IMG/VR virus record: IMGVR_UViG_3300046808_001241
Location: 62,001 to 126,000 of that record
DNA: 64,000 nucleotides
Strand: one strand, 5' to 3'
The notes beneath the pieces are model-generated. The model was not told where the DNA came from. It made no database searches and worked only from the letters and a program-made list of their open reading frames with translations. A program made the position numbers and the translations under genes. Shown piece by piece: positions 1,883 to 40,668 of this stretch. Within the stretch, counting starts at the first letter, position 1; each line of letters opens with the position of its first letter.

Positions 1883-2800
1883 ATGAGTAATATTAATATC
1901 AAATCCATGTTCGATCAAATTAAACAGTCGCTTTCTTCTTCTGACAAGAAAGAAGGAGGCAATGGTCTGTATAAAGAAATTCTTAAATTTTCTGCTGGCA
2001 ATACATATCAAGTCCGTCTTGTTCCTAATCCCACCTCTCCTAAAGAGACAATCTTCCACTACTACAATCACGGTTGGAATTCTAATGCTACAGGCAAATA
2101 TGTAACAGCATTGTGTCCAACCACCTTTGGAGAGAGCTGTCCGATTGATGCTTACTACCTTAAGACCTATCGTACCGGTACTGAATCAGAAAAAGAACAA
2201 GCTCGTGCTCTTTCGCGTAAAGAAGCTTGGATGGTCAACGTTTATGTTATTTCCGATCCAGAGAATCCAGAAAACGAAGGCAAAGTGAAGATTCTTCGTT
2301 ACGGCAAAGAGCTCGCTAAAATTATTGAGTCAGCCCTTGAAGGAGACGATGCTCAAGAGTTTGGCGTAGAAAAGGTTTTCGATGTCGCTAACGGTTCCAC
2401 GCTTCGCATTAAGTGCGAATCTCGTACAGGAAGCAATCGTGGAGCAAAGCAAATGGTTACATATGCCTCTTCGAAGTTCTTAGCTCCTTCGAAAGTTGAG
2501 TTGACGGATACACAACTCGAGGAAGTGCATAACTCAGTGCATGACCTGAAGGCTGTTAACAAGCAAACAACTCCTGCAGAGATGCAGCGTTTGCTTGACG
2601 AACACTTCTTTAATCTTACTACAGGTTCGCCAGTGGAAAAGGATGAGGACGAGTACTCTTCGATTCGCAATGAAGTTCCTACATCAGTTAAGAGAACAGA
2701 AACATCTATCGAAAAAACTTTTGAATCCTCGACAGATTCCGTTTCTGAGTCAGATGAGTCTACCGACGAAGCCTTGAAAAAACTTCTTGCTGATCTTTAA
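1883..2800 (+). CDS. gp32: single-stranded DNA-binding protein, T4 gp32-like
   Basis: VRLVP..HYYNHGW..CPTT.GE.CPI Zn site, NVYVISDPENPENEGKVKI, acidic tail ending LKKLLADL. Confidence 0.9.
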   Translation: MSNINIKSMFDQIKQSLSSSDKKEGGNGLYKEILKFSAGNTYQVRLVPNPTSPKETIFHYYNHGWNSNATGKYVTALCPTTFGESCPIDAYYLKTYRTGTESEKEQARALSRKEAWMVNVYVISDPENPENEGKVKILRYGKELAKIIESALEGDDAQEFGVEKVFDVANGSTLRIKCESRTGSNRGAKQMVTYASSKFLAPSKVELTDTQLEEVHNSVHDLKAVNKQTTPAEMQRLLDEHFFNLTTGSPVEKDEDEYSSIRNEVPTSVKRTETSIEKTFESSTDSVSESDESTDEALKKLLADL

Positions 2801-2828: not shown

Positions 2829-3476
2829 ATGGAACTACTTAAAAAAGCTAACGGTAATATCACTCGCACAGCGGAAGAAAAAGCTCAGATGATCGAGCGC
2901 GCTGCTGAATATTATGGAAAATTTTTGACAGCTTTGGGATTCGATTGGGCAGCAGATCCTCATTCAGCAAACACTCCTAAAAGAGTAGCTAAAGCTTGGG
3001 TTAATGATTTGATTTCCGGTTCAATTAGCCCAGAGCCTGAAGTTACAGCATTTCCTAATGATGAAGGTTATACGGGCCTGATTTGTCAAACACGTATTCC
3101 TGTTGTTAGTATGTGTGCTCATCACAATTTGACGTTTCACGGTGTGTGTCACGCGGCATATATTCCAGGCAAAAATAAGACAGACATGGTTATTGGGTTG
3201 AGCAAACTAAATCGTATCGTGGACTTCTATTCCAGACGACCAAACATTCAGGAAAGTCTAACAAAGCAAATTCACGATCATCTAGATAAACTGTGCGTAG
3301 GCAATCGTGGAGTGGCATGCATTATAGAAAGCCAACATTTTTGTGTAAAATGCAGAGGAGTCAAGAACGATAGTGTTATGAAAACTTCGCAATTATCGGG
3401 TTATTTCCACACCAACGAGGTCGGAAGCCGAGTAGAACTATTTAATCTTATAGACCAGAGTAGATTTGGATCGTGA
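2829..3476 (+). CDS. folE: GTP cyclohydrolase I
   Basis: TPKRVAK, SMCAHH, GLSKLNR, RRPNIQE, H.CVKCRGV motifs. Confidence 0.95.
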   Translation: MELLKKANGNITRTAEEKAQMIERAAEYYGKFLTALGFDWAADPHSANTPKRVAKAWVNDLISGSISPEPEVTAFPNDEGYTGLICQTRIPVVSMCAHHNLTFHGVCHAAYIPGKNKTDMVIGLSKLNRIVDFYSRRPNIQESLTKQIHDHLDKLCVGNRGVACIIESQHFCVKCRGVKNDSVMKTSQLSGYFHTNEVGSRVELFNLIDQSRFGS

Positions 3477-5394: not shown

Positions 5395-7392
5395 ATGTCA
5401 GAAGAAAATTTAGAGCGGCCTCAAAAGAGAGGCAAGGGCCGTCCTCCCGGAGCAAAAAACAAACCCAAAAGAGGTCGTCCAAAAGGTTCTAAGACCAAAG
5501 CAACCCCTCCTCCCGCTCTTCCTAAAATTGAATTTGTAAAAAAAAGTAAACCTTCACGCTCTGAGGAGGAAGTTTTAAACTCACTTTTAAGCGAGGACAA
5601 CCTTTTAGATGCTGGGTACAATACCCATACAGACAAGATTATCAATCAAGAGCCTGTAGATGTTTCTTTTTATTATAGAGGATCAAAGCATGTACCAGTA
5701 GCAGGAGCTCAGTATGAGTTTACTGTTGACATGATTGAAGAGCTGCGTAGATGTAAAAACGATATTGTGTATTTTGCAGAAAACTTTTTTTATATCGTGA
5801 GTATAGATGAAGGCAAACAAAGAATACATTTGTATGAAGCTCAAAAGCAAATGCTTCTTAACATGGTTAACAATAGGTTTTCCGTAAATTTAGCTTCAAG
5901 ACAGAGCGGAAAATCTACATTGCTTACTATATTTGTTCTGTGGATGGCTTGTTTTAATGATGATCACAGAGCAGCAATTGTAGCTAATAAAGAATCGACA
6001 GCAATTAATATTTTCAAACGCGTAAGAATGGCGTACGAACAACTTCCTAATTACATCAAACCCGGCGTTAAAGATTATGGTAAGACCGGAATGACGTTAG
6101 GAAATGATTCAAGTATATTAGTATCTACTACTACAGCCACATCAATTAGAGGTGATAGTTTAAGCACGCTTGCAATTGACGAAGTGGCATTCATAGAATC
6201 TCACTTACTTGAAGAGTTTTGGTCATCCGTTATTCCTGCAGTATCTTCTGGAAAAAAATCCAAAGTATTATTAGTCAGCACACCGAATGGTGTTGGAAAC
6301 AAATTTTATGAAATATTTTCAGGAGCAGAAAGTGGTTCGTTACCTAGTTGGAAACCCTCTCGTATTGATTGGTGGGATAGGCCCGGAAGAGACGAGCAAT
6401 GGAAGCAAGATCAAATCCAACTACTGGGCTCTGAAGAAAAATTTTTACAAGAATTCGGCAATACTTTTTTAGACGATGCTGCTGGAGCAGTTGGAGCTCT
6501 TGTAATCGAACGTCTTAAAAACGAAAAGAAAGATCCAATTTGGACATCAGAAGATGGGGAATATACTGTTTTTGAATATCCAGAACAAAGAAATTTATAT
6601 GTAGTTGGAGTAGATGTCGGAGAAGGTATTGGCAGAGCAGCTTCTGTTGCTCAAATATTAGATGTTACGGATTTACAAAATATTAAACAAGTTGGTATAT
6701 ATGCTTCAAATAAAATTGAGCCATATCACTTTGCAAACAAGCTTTCGACTATCGGTCAATCATGGGGACTTCCTCCAATGTTGATTGAGAGAAATAATTG
6801 CGGAGCTCAAGTAATTGACGCTTTACATCATAAACACAATTACGAAAAAATTGTTTGTTACTCAAAAATCTCTGAACAAGACAAGTACAATAGAACTAGA
6901 AACATGGGAGTACTGTCACACACCAACATTAAATTTGATGGTATTCAAAACATGAGGTATTGGATCAATCATTTACAAACCGTTCATATAAACGACCCTC
7001 ATACAATTTCAGAGTTTGAGACATTTGTAAGATTTCCAAATGGAGTCTTTAGAAAGAGAAATGATAATTTCTTTGACGATCGTGTAATGGCTTTGGTGTG
7101 GGCTTTGTTTATTTTGGAATCGGATATATGTCAGCAATATTTTGAAATTGTTGATTATGATATGCAACACAAACCCCAAAAAATTAAGGATAATGGTTAT
7201 TGGGAGAAAATTGAGCAATTTTATGAATTAAAAGAACTTTCAAAACAATCTACGATTATTCCTAAAATCTTTCGCCCTGAAAACGAACTTGCATTTAAAT
7301 CATTAAATGTTACTCAAAAAGATACAGAGTTTGTAGATAAATATGATGAAGACTTAGAAGGCTTATTAGCTCAAGGCTACGAATTTTTATAA
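5395..7392 (+). CDS. gp17: terminase large subunit (T4 gp17-like) with a basic AT-hook-like N-terminal extension
   Basis: Walker A SRQSGKS, Walker B LAIDE, STPNG, RNaseH-like VGVDVGEG and DDRVMAL. Confidence 0.95.
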   Translation: MSEENLERPQKRGKGRPPGAKNKPKRGRPKGSKTKATPPPALPKIEFVKKSKPSRSEEEVLNSLLSEDNLLDAGYNTHTDKIINQEPVDVSFYYRGSKHVPVAGAQYEFTVDMIEELRRCKNDIVYFAENFFYIVSIDEGKQRIHLYEAQKQMLLNMVNNRFSVNLASRQSGKSTLLTIFVLWMACFNDDHRAAIVANKESTAINIFKRVRMAYEQLPNYIKPGVKDYGKTGMTLGNDSSILVSTTTATSIRGDSLSTLAIDEVAFIESHLLEEFWSSVIPAVSSGKKSKVLLVSTPNGVGNKFYEIFSGAESGSLPSWKPSRIDWWDRPGRDEQWKQDQIQLLGSEEKFLQEFGNTFLDDAAGAVGALVIERLKNEKKDPIWTSEDGEYTVFEYPEQRNLYVVGVDVGEGIGRAASVAQILDVTDLQNIKQVGIYASNKIEPYHFANKLSTIGQSWGLPPMLIERNNCGAQVIDALHHKHNYEKIVCYSKISEQDKYNRTRNMGVLSHTNIKFDGIQNMRYWINHLQTVHINDPHTISEFETFVRFPNGVFRKRNDNFFDDRVMALVWALFILESDICQQYFEIVDYDMQHKPQKIKDNGYWEKIEQFYELKELSKQSTIIPKIFRPENELAFKSLNVTQKDTEFVDKYDEDLEGLLAQGYEFL

Positions 7393-35829: not shown

Positions 35830-36723
35830 ATGGCAGATCTTAAAATATCAGAACTTACCTTAGCTACAACTGTTTCTGGAACAGATGTTGTAGCGATTGT
35901 TAATCAAGGAATTACTAAAAAAGCAACTCTTGATACGCTTTTCAACGCCTCAAGTGCTTCTTATGCTCCATATATCCAGCAAGTAGTACAACCTGTTTCG
36001 ACTTTAGTTCAAACAAATTCTGCAGCATGGAATTATGCATATGTTCAAGTAAACACAAATGCAGCAGAATGGACTGATCACGTTATTTCAAACGAAAACG
36101 TAGCAATTGGGCCATTGAATATGGAACTAATTACTACAGGACATAAAAATACATCAGTTGGAGTAAAAGCTCTTTCTGCGATAACAGTAGGTTCAGGAAA
36201 CGTAGCTGTTGGTTATCAATCTTTATTTTCAACAACATCGGGAAGTGGAAATACAGCAGTTGGTTATAATGCTGGTTATGCAAATGTGGTTGGAGTTAAC
36301 AATACATACATTGGCAATCAAGCAACTGGTAATTGTCCTGATGAGTCAAATGTTATTACTTTAGGAAACTCATCCATTAAAACGCTTCGCTGCCAAGCTG
36401 CAACCATTACTAGCATTTCAGATGCAAGAGATAAAAAAGATATTGTTCCTTTAGAAGTTGGTTTAGATTTTATTAACTCATTGCATCCTGTTGAGTTTAC
36501 ATGGAATATGAGAGATGGAGGTAAAACCAAAACCAAAGACATCGGCTTTATAGCTCAACAATTACTTCAAGCTCAAGAAGAAACGACTCACACTATTCCT
36601 GGTCTCGTTAACGATGCAAATACAGAACATTTGGAAGCTTCTTATGGAAAATTAATTCCTGTGTTAGTCAAAGCAATTCAAGAACTTGCACAAGAAGTCA
36701 AAGAGCTTAAAAAAGTTCGATAG
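35830..36723 (+). CDS. tail fibre/spike with a C-terminal intramolecular chaperone (peptidase S74-like)
   Basis: MADLKISEL start, N.AVG...L..NT.G repeats, SDARDKKDI..L.P.EF.W..GFIAQ. Confidence 0.85.
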   Translation: MADLKISELTLATTVSGTDVVAIVNQGITKKATLDTLFNASSASYAPYIQQVVQPVSTLVQTNSAAWNYAYVQVNTNAAEWTDHVISNENVAIGPLNMELITTGHKNTSVGVKALSAITVGSGNVAVGYQSLFSTTSGSGNTAVGYNAGYANVVGVNNTYIGNQATGNCPDESNVITLGNSSIKTLRCQAATITSISDARDKKDIVPLEVGLDFINSLHPVEFTWNMRDGGKTKTKDIGFIAQQLLQAQEETTHTIPGLVNDANTEHLEASYGKLIPVLVKAIQELAQEVKELKKVR

Positions 36724-36754
36724 TTGACATTAAAACAATGTATTGGATTATAAA
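36724..36754 (+). promoter_or_regulatory. sigma70-type promoter
   Basis: TTGACA-19-TATAAA, 6 nt before ATG 36761. Confidence 0.5.
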
Positions 36755-36760
36755 AGTCCA

Positions 36761-36982
36761 ATGAACACATACATTAAACCAATCGAACACATCACTGGAC
36801 GCAAAACCCAACTCGACTCTGGACTTACAGTTGCTCGTAAGATCAAGATGATTAGTCGTCACTTGAATCCCTCGAAGTACGAGTTTCTCGGCTTCCTTGA
36901 TCGTACCAATGAGGCCATTCTTCGTCCTCGTTACCACAACGTCCGCAACTCCCTCGGTCAGTTTGCGCCAGTTGCAGAGTAA
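36761..36982 (+). CDS. small basic hypothetical protein in its own transcription unit
   Basis: Flanked by a promoter and a terminator; C-ending codon bias. Confidence 0.6.
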   Translation: MNTYIKPIEHITGRKTQLDSGLTVARKIKMISRHLNPSKYEFLGFLDRTNEAILRPRYHNVRNSLGQFAPVAE

Positions 36983-36999
36983 TAGAAAATAAACCTAAA

Positions 37000-37040
37000 A
37001 AAAAAGACCCTTTGCTGTTGCATTGGGTCTTTTTTCTTTT
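37000..37040 (+). terminator. intrinsic terminator (probably bidirectional)
   Basis: aaaaaagaccc / gggtctttttt inverted repeat with T and A tracts. Confidence 0.7.
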
Positions 37041-37052
37041 ATACTAGAAGAG

Positions 37053-37397
37053 ATGACTACAAACATTATCGTAAAATTGCAGTACGAAGCCCTTCATAAT
37101 TGGCCAGGAGTCGTTAATGTATTGCCTGACAAGCCTTGGATTCACATGCTTAAAGACAAGCATCGACATATATTTCATATTACTTTGGAAAAACAAGTAA
37201 CTCACTCCGATAGAGATGTTGAAATTATTTTGTTTAAACAGGAAGTGCTTCGCAAGCTTGAAGTATTTTTTGGAAGACCAGGAGATTTAGGTGCAATGTC
37301 CTGTGAAATGCTTGCAGAGCAGCTTCTGAAAGAATATGATTGCAATTCAGTAGAAGTGCTTGAAGATAACGAAAACGGAGCTAAAGTCTATAAATGA
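37053..37397 (+). CDS. queD: QueD/PTPS-like T-fold protein
   Basis: LHNWP, HRHIFH Zn-histidines, SCE.LAE, VEV.ED.ENGA; ATG at 37053. Confidence 0.65.
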   Translation: MTTNIIVKLQYEALHNWPGVVNVLPDKPWIHMLKDKHRHIFHITLEKQVTHSDRDVEIILFKQEVLRKLEVFFGRPGDLGAMSCEMLAEQLLKEYDCNSVEVLEDNENGAKVYK

Positions 37398-37810
37398 TTT
37401 CATTCGTCTGTGGTCAGCTTTGTTCTGGTAAAACTCTTTATTCTAGAGCTCTTGCGCATACGTCATCAGCTCATTATGTAGAAGTCGGAGATGTGGTGAG
37501 AATGATAAAAATTAGTCAAGATCGCAAGGTACTTCAAAACTCAAAAGAGCTATCCGGAGCAATTGTAAATTGGATTAAGAAAAGTTGTAATGAACACACG
37601 GAGCTTGTTGTATCTGGTGTACGTCAAAAAGAAATTTTGGAAAATTTTCCAAATTCTACTTTACTTTGGATCGAATGTCCGATTAATACTAGAAAAGAGC
37701 GATATCAAAAGCGTGCTCGTGTTGGAGATACGCAAACGTTTGAAGAAGCGGAACAAGGAGATATCAATCTTGGAATAATTGACGTCAGAAATTATATTTT
37801 TAGTAAATGA
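37394..37810 (+). CDS. P-loop nucleotide kinase (adenylate/dephospho-CoA kinase-like)
   Basis: GQLCSGKT, GD.VR, SGVR, R..R lid. Confidence 0.75.
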   Translation: MISFVCGQLCSGKTLYSRALAHTSSAHYVEVGDVVRMIKISQDRKVLQNSKELSGAIVNWIKKSCNEHTELVVSGVRQKEILENFPNSTLLWIECPINTRKERYQKRARVGDTQTFEEAEQGDINLGIIDVRNYIFSK

Positions 37811-38598
37811 AATTCTATTGCATACCACCTAATAACCACTTAGATTTGATGGATCAGTCAGAAAGATATTTTGGTCTTGCTCATCTATATCATCAAAACG
37901 AAAAATACAAGAGACATTTTTTAGCACTTCGTAACAGAAGTCCGAAAGTATGGATAACCATGGATTGCGGAAGTGCAGAACATAGTCTTGTTACAGAAGA
38001 TGTTTTGCTAAATATTGTTGCAGAACTCAAGCCAGACGAAGTAATTGCTCCAGATGTTTTGTTTAATAAAGACGAAACACTGAAGAACTTTAAATCGTTT
38101 GTACAAAAAATGTATAACAAAGGTCTTTTGTCGCACACCTCGATATTTGCTTGTCCTCAAGGTTCTAATAAAGAAGAATGGCTGGAGTGTTATTATCAAA
38201 TGGTTGTTAGTCCTTTCGTAAAATGCATTGGTCTTAGTAAAATTGCAGTCCCAAAATGCTGGAATGATGCAGAAGGAGATATAATGATTGGAGTGTCTAG
38301 AAACCAATGTGTAAAGGAACTAATCGACAAACAATGGCTCATTAAACCTCTACATCTTCTTGGAATGGGAGAACATGATGAATTTGAATACTATTTGAAA
38401 AACAGAGTTCCAAACATTCGTAGTTCTGATAGTTGTTACACAGTTCTTGCTGCGATGAACGGTATTGATTTTGAGAGTGGAGATACTTCAAGAGTGCCTA
38501 CAACGAATGCTTACTTTGATGCAACTCTTACAGAAGAACAAGTAAAAATTGCTAAAAAGAACTTTAACTATCTAAAAAACAAATACAAAGACGTATGA
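37807..38598 (+). CDS. TGT/DpdA-like TIM-barrel transglycosylase
   Basis: MDCG (compare DSG), PDV, PQG, LHLLGMG, SSDS motifs in TGT order; adjacent to QueD-like gene. Confidence 0.6.
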   Translation: MKFYCIPPNNHLDLMDQSERYFGLAHLYHQNEKYKRHFLALRNRSPKVWITMDCGSAEHSLVTEDVLLNIVAELKPDEVIAPDVLFNKDETLKNFKSFVQKMYNKGLLSHTSIFACPQGSNKEEWLECYYQMVVSPFVKCIGLSKIAVPKCWNDAEGDIMIGVSRNQCVKELIDKQWLIKPLHLLGMGEHDEFEYYLKNRVPNIRSSDSCYTVLAAMNGIDFESGDTSRVPTTNAYFDATLTEEQVKIAKKNFNYLKNKYKDV

Positions 38599-39269
38599 GT
38601 AAACTGTTAATTGTCACTTGCACACAAGCAAAAACCGATAAAGAATTTGAAGTTAGACCGATTTTTCATAGTCTAAGAAAACAGTTTGAATCAAATAAAC
38701 AAGTAGAGTTTCACATCTTTAAAGACAATCAAAGGGGTCTTTCTCAATGTTACAATGAGATTTTAAAAGATCCTGATCACATCGACAAAACTGCTTTGTT
38801 TGTGCATGATGATGTAGTGTTAGAAGATTTGTTCTTATACGAAAAACTTATTAATAGTCCGTATTCTATTACCGGCCTTGCTGGCGCTAAAACCTTCAAT
38901 AAAGCGAATGACAAGCTAGCCTGGCACCTTGCTGCAGATCGTTCAAGTTATGTGGGAGAGGTTTGTCATGTAACTAAAGACAGAGGTGTTTGGACAACAT
39001 GTTTTGGGCCAACAAATTCAAGAGCCCTTACACTAGACGGCTTGTTCATTTCTTGTAAAGTTAAAGATCTTGTGGAAAAGGAATTGTATTTTGATGAGAG
39101 CTTTGCTTTTCACTTCTATGATTTGTCTTTTTGTATGAGAGCTCATGAAAAGAAAGTTACATGCGGCGTATTGTCTATTCGAGCAGTTCATAGTGGTCTT
39201 GGAGATTCTATGTTGACGCCAGAATGGGAAAAACAAAATATATTGTTTAAAGAAAAATACTGCAAATGA
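38595..39269 (+). CDS. GT-A fold glycosyltransferase
   Basis: GLSQCYN, FVHDD, GLAG, LDGLFI, FDE.F.FHFYD.SFC, H.G. Confidence 0.8.
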   Translation: MSKLLIVTCTQAKTDKEFEVRPIFHSLRKQFESNKQVEFHIFKDNQRGLSQCYNEILKDPDHIDKTALFVHDDVVLEDLFLYEKLINSPYSITGLAGAKTFNKANDKLAWHLAADRSSYVGEVCHVTKDRGVWTTCFGPTNSRALTLDGLFISCKVKDLVEKELYFDESFAFHFYDLSFCMRAHEKKVTCGVLSIRAVHSGLGDSMLTPEWEKQNILFKEKYCK

Positions 39270-39796
39270 TTTTAACCAACAAACAAATAACAGCTATTAC
39301 TAACGAAGGTGCTTATGAATGCCTTTTTTCAAAACAAAGGTTTTCGACTGCTTTTTTTGAAGATCCTTCACCGCTGGGAAGCATTATCGTATTTGAGACT
39401 CCTGTAAAAATTGGTCCTGTGAGTTTTGAACGCTCGTTAGTTATTTGTGGAGAGCTTCCAAATACTAATATATTTGGTGGAGTTTGCTTTCAAAGACTTT
39501 ATTCAGCGCAACTTGGTTCAATTCTTTCGAATTTCTTAGAAAAGCAATGCTATGTTAACGAAAATTGTTTGTTTGTTGAACAAGAACAAACATCGATTAC
39601 GGTAGTCAATCAATTAAAATCTAGTATTATGTTTCATATTTTCCTTCCAATCGTTGTTAGTAAAGAAGGAACTAAAGGACTCTATGAAATTAAATTAGAA
39701 GAAGATAGCATGCAAGAGTTTAAAGAACATTGTGTAAATTCTTTTCATCACCTAACAAAAAGTTTGTTTCTAGAAACTCAGCGTGACAACATTTGA
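39266..39796 (+). CDS. divergent DUF366-like (BPL/LplA-fold) protein
   Basis: F....F...P.G.I..F..P, E.P.....GG..FQRL pattern; recalled similarity only. Confidence 0.45.
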   Translation: MILTNKQITAITNEGAYECLFSKQRFSTAFFEDPSPLGSIIVFETPVKIGPVSFERSLVICGELPNTNIFGGVCFQRLYSAQLGSILSNFLEKQCYVNENCLFVEQEQTSITVVNQLKSSIMFHIFLPIVVSKEGTKGLYEIKLEEDSMQEFKEHCVNSFHHLTKSLFLETQRDNI

Positions 39797-40133
39797 TTAT
39801 ATCAAAGACATCATCATAACCAAACGAGGAGACTTGCCTTTAGATGGGTATGCACCATTTTTAATAAATCGATTTTTATCGTTTATTAATCCTCAAGTTT
39901 GTGAAGCAGTTAATCAACTAAATACCAAAATACTATTAGAAGACAAATTGCTGCACTATAAGCTAATGCTGTCATTGTTTCCAAAGATGAGTTCTGTACC
40001 TTATATTAAATACGTTAAAAAGGTCCAAGAAGAGAAAGATGAGAATCAAGAACTAAAAACTAAAATAAAAGTTCTTGCTCAAAACATGGAACTTTCGGAA
40101 AGAGAAGTTACTACTTTGCTTTCTTCTTTTTAG
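39783..40133 (+). CDS. gp62: clamp loader small subunit (gp62-like)
   Basis: FDYI..I, Y.PFLINRFLS, N.LN, H/Q-Y..L..L.PK..Y.K. Confidence 0.7.
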   Translation: MTTFDYIKDIIITKRGDLPLDGYAPFLINRFLSFINPQVCEAVNQLNTKILLEDKLLHYKLMLSLFPKMSSVPYIKYVKKVQEEKDENQELKTKIKVLAQNMELSEREVTTLLSSF

Positions 40134-40668
40134 CTTCTTCTTTTTCTTTGCGCATTTTTTCTAATTTTTCGCGATCCTTTTTCAGTTGAGGATTGCGTTC
40201 GCTTTCGTCATGAAACGCACCCTTCATGTCATATTCTTTTTTCTTTTCGGAAATAACTCTGCTGAAAAGATCTTTAAAAGTCAAACCTTCTTTCTTTAAG
40301 AAATCAGGTTTCTTTTTAGATTTATCTGCAACAGCCTTTTTCATTGACTCCTTTTTATTGCCATCTTTATCAACATCCATGTAATCTGGTTTGGCTTTCT
40401 TTTTAGCCTCTTCGATGGTTTCTTGATTGTCTTTGCATTCTTCGCAGCCAGTACAATCACAGCCCTTTGCAGCATGTTTGCAATGCAATTCCTTTGCTCC
40501 TTTGTTAGTAATTACGTTGTATGCTTCAGCAAGCATGTCTTGGTCTTTTGATAATGCAGTGTTACTAAGAATAGGAGCTTGTTCGATCAATTGATCTTTA
40601 GAAGGTTCAACTTTTTTAGTAATGCCTTCGTAAAGTCCAGAAAGAGTTTGAGTGTCTTTAAATACCAT
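40111..40668 (-). CDS. basic hypothetical head-associated protein
   Basis: PDYMDVDKDGNKKESMKKA motif, CKH..GCDC.GC..C cluster; TAAATA-N6-ATG. Confidence 0.6.
   Translation of the reverse strand: MVFKDTQTLSGLYEGITKKVEPSKDQLIEQAPILSNTALSKDQDMLAEAYNVITNKGAKELHCKHAAKGCDCTGCEECKDNQETIEEAKKKAKPDYMDVDKDGNKKESMKKAVADKSKKKPDFLKKEGLTFKDLFSRVISEKKKEYDMKGAFHDESERNPQLKKDREKLEKMRKEKEEAKKKKAK

What the first reader, a model, noticed from the sequence alone, without database searches (positions are those of the whole stretch)
37807..38598. Divergent TGT-fold enzyme with DCG in place of the usual DSG motif
Seen: motif order MDCG..PDV..PQG..LHLLGMG..SSDS in only 263 aa, with no obvious C-terminal Zn domain. 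Established: TGT and DpdA use an Asp in DSG and a second Asp after the HLLG strand. Inference: a distinct DpdA-like subfamily whose pocket may take a different base; acting on tRNA (host translation control) is an alternative.
Basis: partly seen in the sequence, partly recalled or inferred. Interest (0 to 1): 0.6.

Follow-up and report, generated by a model that had tools for sequence, protein, structure and literature searches.

The report
DpdA3 7-deazaguanine transglycosylase of a jumbo phage
The gene is real and encodes a minimal TGT-fold base-exchange enzyme, but it belongs to the DpdA3 family described in 2023, and with its neighbours it predicts that this freshwater jumbo phage replaces the guanine in its DNA with 7-deazaguanine.

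Summary

The 217-kb phage genome encodes FolE, QueD and QueE. No QueC was detected. Directly upstream of dpdA3 lies DpdL with its exact LxxxHRHxF signature. This is the phiST-type gene set, so dDG is the predicted product.

One result is new. The small P-loop gene between dpdL and dpdA3 has an NMP-kinase fold. It sits upstream of dpdA3 in 48 of 51 non-redundant loci and is fused to DpdL in 5 of them. Published reconstitution with DpdL and DpdA3 alone failed, so this kinase may be the missing component. Base exchange on nucleotides rather than on DNA is not excluded.

Verdict: a new member of a known kind.

The parts
37807..38598 (+). dpdA3: a 263-aa minimal TGT-fold transglycosylase. Predicted roles: D53 general acid/base (nt 37963-37965), D83 base recognition, Q118-G119, G142-S144-K145 in the loop that reads the 7-substituent, H183/L185/G186, and D208 nucleophile (nt 38428-38430).
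37394..37810 (+). A P-loop protein with an NMP-kinase fold (138 aa, Walker A GQLCSGKT). It is the homologue of phiST CGPG_00066 and a conserved third member of the dpdL-kinase-dpdA3 unit. It overlaps both neighbours by 4 bp (ATGA).
   Evidence: Pfam AAA_18 matches at E 2.8e-7. It is 29% identical to CGPG_00066 at E 2e-10. The AF2 model has pLDDT 90.9. The best PDB folds are adenylate and UMP/CMP kinases at E 3e-6. It is present in 48 of 51 non-redundant loci and fused to DpdL in 5 of them.
37053..37397 (+). dpdL: a QueD paralogue and the proposed 7-carboxy-7-deazaguanine decarboxylase. The mechanical ORF starts at TTG 37023. The ATG at 37053 matches the N-termini of homologues. The signature LKDKHRHIF fits LxxxHRHxF.
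   Evidence: It is 39-48% identical to phiST CGPG_00067 and to metagenomic homologues. It matches PHROG 17812 at E 5e-23. The motif definition is from PMC10516641. All 70 homologues found carry the exact motif.
2829..3476 (+). folE (GTP cyclohydrolase I), the first step of 7-deazaguanine synthesis. It lies 34 kb upstream of dpdA3 within the window.
   Evidence: PF01227 matches at E 2e-42. It is 49% identical to phiST FolE.
38595..39269 (+). A glycosyltransferase-like gene (224 aa) that overlaps the dpdA3 stop by 4 bp. Its membership of the module is uncertain.
   Evidence: Glyco_tranf_2_5 matches at E 6.7e-6, just under the cut-off. It is syntenic only within the window's own clade of close relatives.
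39266..39796 (+). A 176-aa protein of unknown function with a weak DUF366 match, translationally coupled to the glycosyltransferase-like gene. Its membership of the module is uncertain.
   Evidence: PF04017 matches at E 1.9e-4, below the cut-off. The Atlas search gave no lead. It is syntenic only in the window clade.

Best explanation
The gene encodes a DpdA3-family 7-deazaguanine transglycosylase. It is a stripped-down TGT-type TIM barrel that swaps guanine for a 7-deazaguanine base by the double-displacement chemistry of TGT and DpdA. In that chemistry D208 would attack C1' and form a covalent intermediate. D53 would act as general acid/base. [quoted passage not shown]

The gene is the last of a tightly packed unit, dpdL-kinase-dpdA3. 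The phage also encodes FolE, QueD and QueE, and no QueC was detected. The pathway should therefore stop at 7-carboxy-7-deazaguanine (CDG). DpdL is proposed to decarboxylate CDG to 7-deazaguanine (DG), and DpdA3 puts DG in place of G. As in Cellulophaga phage phiST, the virion DNA should carry dDG instead of dG and resist restriction enzymes whose sites contain guanine.

Shown here: family membership, the fold, the conserved residues and the gene set. Inferred: the identity of the base (DG), complete replacement, and that the substrate is DNA after replication. The last is the published model and has never been shown biochemically for DpdA3.
For: Homology to the founding members. tblastn gives 41.7% identity over 92% of the query to phiST, phi13:1 and phi19:2, and 40.8% to Chryseobacterium phage MA9V-3, at E 1e-52 to 1e-56. 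A family HMM built from 72 loci matches the more distant published DpdA3 of Flavobacterium phage immuto_2-6A over its full length at E 3.5e-27.

Literature. CGPG_00065 was named DpdA3. phiST DNA contains 302,000 dDG per 10^6 nucleotides and has no dG peak. DpdL is defined by LxxxHRHxF.

Active site. D53, D83 and D208 are invariant in 52 sequences, and each lies at or just after the C-terminal end of a beta-strand of the model. They align with the DSG Asp, the second Asp and the SCDSS Asp of DpdA1, and D53 aligns with D89 of E. coli Tgt. In bDpdA the three corresponding Asp are invariant, and mutation of D95 or D256 abolishes exchange (PMC10164549).

Pathway. FolE is present. QueD and QueE are adjacent at genome 39.2-40.4 kb. 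No QueC was found. DpdL carries the exact motif.

Operon. Start and stop codons overlap by 4 bp (ATGA) between dpdL, the kinase gene, dpdA3 and the glycosyltransferase-like gene.

Synteny. DpdL is present in 51 of 51 non-redundant DpdA3 loci.

Expression hint. Contigs from a freshwater metatranscriptome lie at 100% identity on dpdL, on the kinase gene, across the kinase/dpdA3 junction and on dpdA3.
Against: No DpdA3 has ever been shown to be active. Cui et al. could not detect dDG when they co-expressed DpdL and DpdA3 in E. coli.

Sequence methods alone do not link this protein to TGT. Pfam and NCBIfam give no hit. A family HMM finds no TGT among PDB sequences. My hhalign runs were not significant, with probability below 1%. 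The link to TGT therefore rests on the predicted structure and on the HHpred result published for phiST.

MAFFT did not align the E. coli Tgt nucleophile motif MFDCV with RSSDS. The D208 assignment rests on the DpdA1 alignment and on its position on the last catalytic strand.

This phage has no isolate, so its DNA chemistry is unmeasured. QueC could be supplied by the host.

The modules carry nucleotide-metabolism genes that a purely post-replicative mechanism does not need (see the rival explanations).
Confidence: 0.8

Rival explanations
1. Nucleotide-level (pre-replicative) route. DpdA3 exchanges the base on a free deoxynucleotide (dGMP or dGTP) rather than on DNA. A dUTPase/DCD- or MazG-like hydrolase turns dGTP into dGMP and depletes dGTP. 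DpdA3 makes the 7-deaza-dGMP derivative. DpdL may decarboxylate at this stage. The adjacent NMP-kinase-fold protein phosphorylates the product, and the phage polymerase incorporates it. This resembles the T4 hmC and S-2L Z-genome schemes.
For: The protein encoded between dpdL and dpdA3 has an NMP-kinase fold. Its best matches are adenylate and UMP/CMP kinases at E 3e-6, and no polynucleotide kinase appears among the 50 hits listed. It is present in 48 of 51 non-redundant loci and fused to DpdL in 5 of them.

A DCD/dUTPase-like or MazG-like hydrolase is present in 33 of 51 loci, and a phosphoribosyltransferase in 7 of 51. The distant immuto DpdA3 locus also has a phosphoribosyltransferase, a 'hydrolase' and a 'thymidylate kinase' flanking DpdA3.

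DpdA3 is the only DpdA subfamily tied to 100% replacement. From general knowledge, complete replacement is otherwise achieved through modified dNTP pools.

DpdA3 lacks the large Ins8 insertion that bDpdA is proposed to place in the DNA minor groove (263 aa against 413).

The ADG nucleoside was reported in the cytoplasm of cells infected with CP220 (cited).
Against: All characterised TGT and DpdA enzymes act on polynucleotides. Cui et al. argue that a DpdA in every modified phage implies post-replicative insertion.

The window phage has no phosphoribosyltransferase homologue. Its only DCD-like gene is 82 kb away and could be an ordinary dUTPase.

The kinase and the phosphoribosyltransferase could instead recycle released guanine into GTP for FolE. 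In one lineage the kinase domain is fused to a DNA ligase, which points towards DNA ends rather than nucleotides.

pI does not discriminate: the median is 5.6 for DpdA3 and 5.8 for DpdA1.
Confidence: 0.25
2. The chemistry is the same but the base differs. DpdA3 inserts CDG (7-carboxy-7-deazaguanine), and DpdL removes the carboxyl group afterwards, on DNA or on a nucleotide.
For: Cui et al. raise CDG as the common precursor for DpdA3 phages that carry dDG and dADG.

The loop that reads the 7-substituent in TGTs carries an invariant Ser-Lys pair in DpdA3, G142-L-S144-K145. A lysine there could pair with a carboxylate; this is my inference.

The DpdL-kinase fusions would place DpdL just before a nucleotide kinase.
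Against: The authors' structural model of DpdL suggested it acts on the free base. No dCDG was detected in phiST DNA. The immuto DpdA3 works in a preQ1-type pathway, so a carboxylate-specific pocket cannot be general. I could not inspect the model coordinates to confirm where K145 points.
Confidence: 0.2
3. A tRNA-guanine transglycosylase that remodels host or phage tRNA.
For: The fold is shared with tRNA-guanine transglycosylases.
Against: There is no Zn subdomain and no PUA or C-terminal tRNA-binding domain. PF01702 gives no hit. The gene is always linked to DpdL and to 7-deazaguanine synthesis genes. Characterised family members come from phages whose DNA is fully modified.
Confidence: 0.03

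Closest known systems
DpdA3 of Cellulophaga phage phiST (CGPG_00065, YP_007673446.1) and its relatives phi13:1 and phi19:2 (Cui et al. 2023, NAR 51:9214, PMC10516641)
   Same: The two proteins are 40-42% identical over their full length and about the same size (263 and 259 aa). The gene order dpdL, P-loop gene, dpdA3 is the same. Both phages have FolE, QueD and QueE; phiST lacks QueC and none was detected here. DpdL carries the same LxxxHRHxF motif. The catalytic Asp residues and the Q-G, G-x-S-K, H-x-L-G and R-S-x-D-S motifs are the same.
   Different: The host phage is a 217-kb freshwater jumbo phage with T4-like terminase and gp32, not an 80-kb marine Cbastvirus. The synthesis genes are dispersed: folE lies 34 kb from dpdA3 and queD/queE about 59 kb from it, rather than in one cluster. 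No MazG-like gene is adjacent. Position 54 is Cys here and Asn in phiST. A glycosyltransferase-like gene and a DUF366-like gene are translationally coupled downstream.
[quoted passage not shown]
   Same: The family HMM matches it over its full length at E 3.5e-27, with the same motif series (DNS, PD, QG, HLLGCG..EF, SLDTS). Nucleotide-metabolism genes lie nearby.
   Different: Identity is only about 23%. That phage has QueC, QueF and DpdN and carries formyl-dPreQ1, not dDG. It has no DpdL. Its neighbouring kinase is of the AAA_28 type, not the AAA_18 type found here.
Bacterial DpdA (S. Montevideo, PDB 7UI4) and phage DpdA1 (Enterobacteria phage 9g gp03)
   Different: Sequence identity is 14%. 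DpdA3 lacks the roughly 130-residue Ins8 insertion of bDpdA. The motif is DN[G/S] or DCG instead of DSG, and Gln replaces His181. There is no DpdB ATPase partner. bDpdA and DpdA1 modify 0.1-30% of G, whereas DpdA3 phages show 100%.
tRNA-guanine transglycosylases (bacterial Tgt, archaeal ArcTGT; Pfam PF01702)
   Different: Pfam gives no match. There is no CxCxxC...H zinc site, no N-terminal hairpin and no C-terminal domains. The protein is about 110 residues shorter than E. coli Tgt (375 aa).

Membership tests
DpdA3 (phage 7-deazaguanine transglycosylase subfamily, Cui et al. 2023) | Significant full-length sequence similarity to the founding members (phiST CGPG_00065, immuto gp206) | tested here: met
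   Identity to phiST is 41.7% at E 1e-52 and 40% over residues 1-258 at E 5e-58. The family HMM matches immuto gp206 at E 3.5e-27.
DpdA3 (phage 7-deazaguanine transglycosylase subfamily, Cui et al. 2023) | TGT/DpdA-type TIM-barrel fold | tested here: met
DpdA3 (phage 7-deazaguanine transglycosylase subfamily, Cui et al. 2023) | Three conserved active-site aspartates equivalent to bDpdA D95, D130 and D256 | tested here: met
   D53, D83 and D208 are invariant in 52 sequences and align with the DpdA1 Asp residues. The E. coli Tgt nucleophile was not aligned by MAFFT, so D208 is assigned through DpdA1 and its strand position.
DpdA3 (phage 7-deazaguanine transglycosylase subfamily, Cui et al. 2023) | Encoded with 7-deazaguanine synthesis genes (FolE, QueD, QueE) | tested here: met
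   No QueC was detected.
DpdA3 (phage 7-deazaguanine transglycosylase subfamily, Cui et al. 2023) | Complete replacement of dG in virion DNA | not testable with these tools
   This needs LC-MS/MS of phage DNA. The genome is known only from a metagenome.
DpdA3 (phage 7-deazaguanine transglycosylase subfamily, Cui et al. 2023) | Guanine/7-deazaguanine exchange activity | not testable with these tools
   This has not been shown for any DpdA3.
Canonical tRNA-guanine transglycosylase (Pfam PF01702) | Match to the Pfam TGT model | tested here: not met
   There is no hit at E<=0.1 on the protein and none at E<=10 on the whole genome.
Canonical tRNA-guanine transglycosylase (Pfam PF01702) | C-terminal zinc site (CxCxxC...H) | tested here: not met
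   One Cys and no His follow D208. E. coli Tgt has CDCYTC at residues 302-307.
DpdL (proposed CDG decarboxylase) - neighbour at 37053-37397 | LxxxHRHxF in place of the QueD motif CxxxHGH | tested here: met
   The sequence LKDKHRHIF is present. The motif is defined. All 70 homologues carry it.
DpdL (proposed CDG decarboxylase) - neighbour at 37053-37397 | Homology to phiST CGPG_00067 / T-fold PTPS family | tested here: met
   Identity to CGPG_00067 is 40% at E 3e-21. A direct Pfam scan finds no PTPS match. The published PTPS link for phiST is by HHpred.
Nucleoside-monophosphate kinase fold - neighbour at 37394-37810 | P-loop NMP-kinase fold with Walker A and LID arginines | tested here: met
   AAA_18 matches at E 2.8e-7. 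G7, G12, K13, R44, R77, R103 and R107 are invariant. Foldseek's best matches are adenylate and UMP/CMP kinases. The substrate is unknown.

The most novel reading that the evidence does not exclude
DpdA3 systems may not be purely post-replicative DNA base-exchangers as currently proposed. They would then be a three-enzyme nucleotide-level pathway. DpdA3 would swap guanine for CDG or DG on a deoxynucleotide. DpdL and the fused or adjacent NMP-kinase-fold protein would process and phosphorylate the product. A dUTPase/MazG-like hydrolase would deplete dGTP, and the polymerase would write a G-free genome. At the least, the conserved kinase would be an obligatory third component, and its omission would explain the failed DpdL + DpdA3 reconstitution.
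Probability: 0.25. Interest if true: 0.8.

Novelty: new member of a known kind. Interest (0 to 1): 0.45.

Why it matters
The gene is a reliable marker. It predicts that a whole clade of freshwater jumbo phages, with dozens of metagenomic relatives at 60-90% identity, carries DNA in which guanine is fully replaced by 7-deazaguanine. Such DNA would resist many restriction enzymes and may bias sequencing and cloning.

DpdA3 is the only DpdA subfamily linked to 100% replacement, and it has never been reconstituted. This survey shows that a protein with an NMP-kinase fold is as constant a partner of DpdA3 as DpdL is, and in some lineages it is fused to DpdL. That gives a concrete, testable reason for the failed reconstitution. 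It also reopens the question of whether insertion happens on DNA or on nucleotides.

Tried and rejected
1. Pfam and NCBIfam scans of the protein gave no hits. PF01702 gave no hit on the whole genome at E<=10.

2. A family HMM searched against PDB sequences returned only chance hits: a kinesin-like protein, TOR2 and isocitrate lyase, at E 0.07-0.4.

3. hhalign of the family alignment against E. coli Tgt and against a DpdA1 alignment gave probabilities below 1%. The local alignments did pair the expected motifs, but they are not statistical evidence.

4. My third word search, with phage 9g DpdA1 as query, listed only proteins at least 70% identical among the 120 shown. It added no diversity.

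6. pI as a discriminator between DNA and nucleotide substrates was uninformative. The median is 5.6 for DpdA3 and 5.8 for DpdA1, a family known to act on DNA.

7. The promoter and terminator scan found no more sites than shuffled sequence (17 against 18.3 expected). The TTGACA-16-GATTAT site at 36724-36751 upstream of dpdL is only suggestive.

8. The Atlas search for the DUF366-like protein gave no lead.

9. Homologues of the phiST MazG-like protein and of the phosphoribosyltransferase were not found in this genome.

10. I did not run the large representative-protein search. The family was identified without it.

11. The metatranscriptome contigs lie on the genes, but they cannot prove transcription, because DNA can be present in RNA libraries.

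Full report
**Observation**

The window contains an ATG-initiated ORF at 37807-38598 (+) encoding 263 aa. Only one Cys and no His follow residue 208, so there is no TGT-type zinc site. E. coli Tgt carries CDCYTC at residues 302-307.

The gene is real. 349 database proteins match at E<=1e-3, up to 90% identity. It also matches PHROG 20335, of unknown function, over its full length at E 2e-58.

**What it is**

Pfam and NCBIfam give no hit. tblastn against phage genomes finds 41-42% identity, at E 1e-52 to 1e-56, to one gene in Cellulophaga phages phiST, phi13:1 and phi19:2 and in Chryseobacterium phage MA9V-3. In phiST that gene is CGPG_00065, and it follows QueD, QueE, FolE, a MazG-like gene, CGPG_00067 and CGPG_00066.

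Cui et al. 2023 (PMC10516641) named CGPG_00065 the founding member of the DpdA3 subfamily, on the basis of an HHpred match of 98.8% probability to PF01702. They showed that phiST DNA has no dG and carries 302,000 dDG per 10^6 nucleotides. They named CGPG_00067 DpdL, a QueD paralogue with LxxxHRHxF, and proposed it as a decarboxylase of 7-carboxy-7-deazaguanine. The held literature contains no other paper on DpdA3.

**Fold**

I built a 52-sequence alignment spanning 34-90% identity. From it AlphaFold gave a confident model, with pLDDT 94.5 and pTM 0.91. The 50 top Foldseek PDB hits listed (of at least 500 counted) are all tRNA-guanine transglycosylases, at E about 1e-7.

Sequence-only links to TGT failed or were not significant. 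The connection rests on the structure and on the published HHpred result.

**Active site**

The residues invariant across the family are D53, D83, Q118-G119, G142, S144-K145, H183, L185-G186, E192, R205-S206, D208-S209 and a few others. Each catalytic motif lies at or just after the C-terminal end of a successive beta-strand of the model.

Alignment with DpdA1 and E. coli Tgt gives these pairings:
- D53 pairs with the Asp of DSG, which is D89 in E. coli Tgt.
- D83 pairs with the second Asp.
- Q118 pairs with the Gln of Tgt and the His of DpdA.
- HLLGMG pairs with YLMGVG in Tgt and HGFG in DpdA1.
- RSSDS pairs with SCDSS in DpdA1.

In bacterial DpdA the equivalent D95 is the general acid/base, D130 and H181 read the base, and D256 is the nucleophile. 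The D95A and D256A mutants are inactive (PMC10164549).

The E. coli Tgt nucleophile motif was not aligned by MAFFT. D208 is therefore assigned through DpdA1 and its strand position.

**The 'DCG' motif**

This is the least meaningful part of the finding. Position 54 is Asn in at least 90% of the family. Among 55 non-redundant loci the triplet reads DNG in 26, DNS in 24, DNA in 2, DCG in 2 and DCS in 1. Relatives at 74-80% identity switch between C and N.

**Genome context**

The window covers positions 62001-126000 of a 217,182-bp viral record with direct terminal repeats. G+C is 36.7%. The terminase and gp32 are T4-like. The sequence recurs in freshwater metagenomes.

The genome encodes FolE at window 2829-3476. 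QueD and QueE lie side by side at genome 39.2-40.4 kb. No QueC was detected.

Directly upstream of dpdA3 lie two genes:
- a DpdL homologue at 37053-37397, with the sequence LKDKHRHIF, 40% identical to CGPG_00067;
- a 138-aa P-loop protein at 37394-37810, homologous to CGPG_00066.

dpdL, the kinase gene, dpdA3, a glycosyltransferase-like gene and a DUF366-like gene overlap each other by 4 bp (ATGA). Contigs from a metatranscriptome lie on dpdL, on the kinase gene, across the kinase/dpdA3 junction and on dpdA3. This does not prove transcription.

This is the phiST-type gene set, so the predicted product is dDG.

**A result beyond the literature**

Cui et al. stated that CGPG_00066 has no homologues in other 7-deazaguanine phages. 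They also reported that co-expressing DpdL and DpdA3 gave no dDG.

I fetched 68 IMG/VR loci and several metagenomic contigs and scanned them with HMMs. Among 51 non-redundant DpdA3 loci with at least 2.6 kb of upstream sequence:
- DpdL is present in 51;
- the P-loop protein is present in 48, always upstream on the same strand;
- DpdL and the P-loop protein form one fused ORF of about 300-330 aa in 5;
- a DCD/dUTPase-like or MazG-like hydrolase is present in 33;
- a phosphoribosyltransferase is present in 7.

Counting redundant loci, 10 carry the fusion. This locus set was recovered with patterns from the phiST-type alignment, so it is biased towards that type.

The P-loop protein folds confidently (pLDDT 90.9). 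Its best PDB matches are adenylate and UMP/CMP kinases.

The distant DpdA3 locus of Flavobacterium phage immuto, whose DNA is 100% formyl-dPreQ1, also has a phosphoribosyltransferase, a 'hydrolase' and a 'thymidylate kinase' around dpdA3. That kinase is homologous, at E 4e-13, to an AAA_28 gene that sits next to QueE in the present genome.

**Mechanism**

The best-supported reading is the published one. DpdA3 exchanges G for a 7-deazaguanine, here DG made by FolE, QueD, QueE and DpdL, using TGT-type double-displacement chemistry.

Family membership, the fold, the conserved residues and the gene set are shown here. The identity of the base, complete replacement and DNA as the substrate are inferred.

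The constant presence of an NMP-kinase-fold protein and of nucleotide hydrolases keeps two other models open. In the first, the exchange happens on nucleotides before replication. In the second, guanine released by the exchange is recycled into GTP. CDG as the inserted base is also not excluded, and the invariant Ser-Lys pair in the loop that reads the 7-substituent would fit a carboxylate. A tRNA role has no support.

**Verdict**

The protein is a new member of a known kind. The conserved kinase, which is sometimes fused to DpdL, is a useful and testable lead.

Noticed in passing
window 37394-37810 (+); L013:4082-4996, L043, L051, L053, L073, L076, L080, L037: The P-loop protein between dpdL and dpdA3 has an NMP-kinase fold. 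It is present in 48 of 51 non-redundant DpdA3 loci. In 5 non-redundant loci (10 loci in all) it is fused to DpdL in one ORF of about 300-330 aa. The 2023 paper reported no homologues of this gene (CGPG_00066) in other 7-deazaguanine phages.
   Followed up: yes
L004:4403-5983: In one lineage the same kinase-like domain forms the N-terminus of a 526-aa ATP-dependent DNA ligase. In the window's genome the ligase part matches a separate gene at genome 27071-28156. This hints at a role at DNA ends rather than on nucleotides.
   Followed up: partly
outside the window: genome 40411-41082 (L003:2690-3361): A 223-aa AAA_28 P-loop protein lies directly after queD-queE. It is homologous to the 'thymidylate kinase' gp203 next to DpdA3 and DpdN in Flavobacterium phage immuto (E 4e-13), and to an AAA_28 gene 4 kb upstream of DpdA3 in L012 (E 3e-11). 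This is a second kinase-like gene that recurs in these clusters.
   Followed up: partly
L006:2996-3960, L013:3043-4082, L083:4774-5169: A phosphoribosyltransferase and a DCD/dUTPase-like gene sit between folE and dpdL in several DpdA3 lineages, and a phosphoribosyltransferase is present in immuto. No phosphoribosyltransferase homologue was found in the window's genome. Its only DCD/dUTPase-like gene is at genome 182337-182852.
   Followed up: partly
window 38595-40133 (+): A glycosyltransferase-like gene (Glyco_tranf_2_5, just under the cut-off), a 176-aa protein with a weak DUF366 match and a clamp-loader-like 116-aa ORF follow dpdA3 with overlapping start and stop codons. This arrangement is conserved only in the window's own clade, so any link to the modification is unknown.
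   Followed up: partly
L010:7647-8528 (Chryseobacterium phage MA9V-3, XQU63047.1): In this phage DpdL is the C-terminal third of a 293-aa protein. The N-terminal part is Cys-rich and was not identified.
   Followed up: no
window 35830-36723 (+): A tail-fibre or tail-spike C-terminal fragment-like protein (297 aa) with an endosialidase-chaperone (Peptidase_S74) domain lies immediately upstream of the dpdL operon, separated from it by a 300-bp gap.
   Followed up: no
window 1883-2800, 2829-3476, 5395-7392 (+): A gp32-like ssDNA-binding protein, FolE and a T4-type large terminase lie close together. The terminase is at most 35% identical to those of Rhizobium/Agrobacterium phages and cyanophages, so the phage has no close cultured relative.
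   Followed up: partly
window 36700-40200, run X3: Contigs from a freshwater metatranscriptome match dpdL, the kinase gene and dpdA3 at 100% identity. None lies between about 38450 and 39850, on the glycosyltransferase-like and DUF366-like genes. DNA carry-over cannot be excluded.
   Followed up: partly
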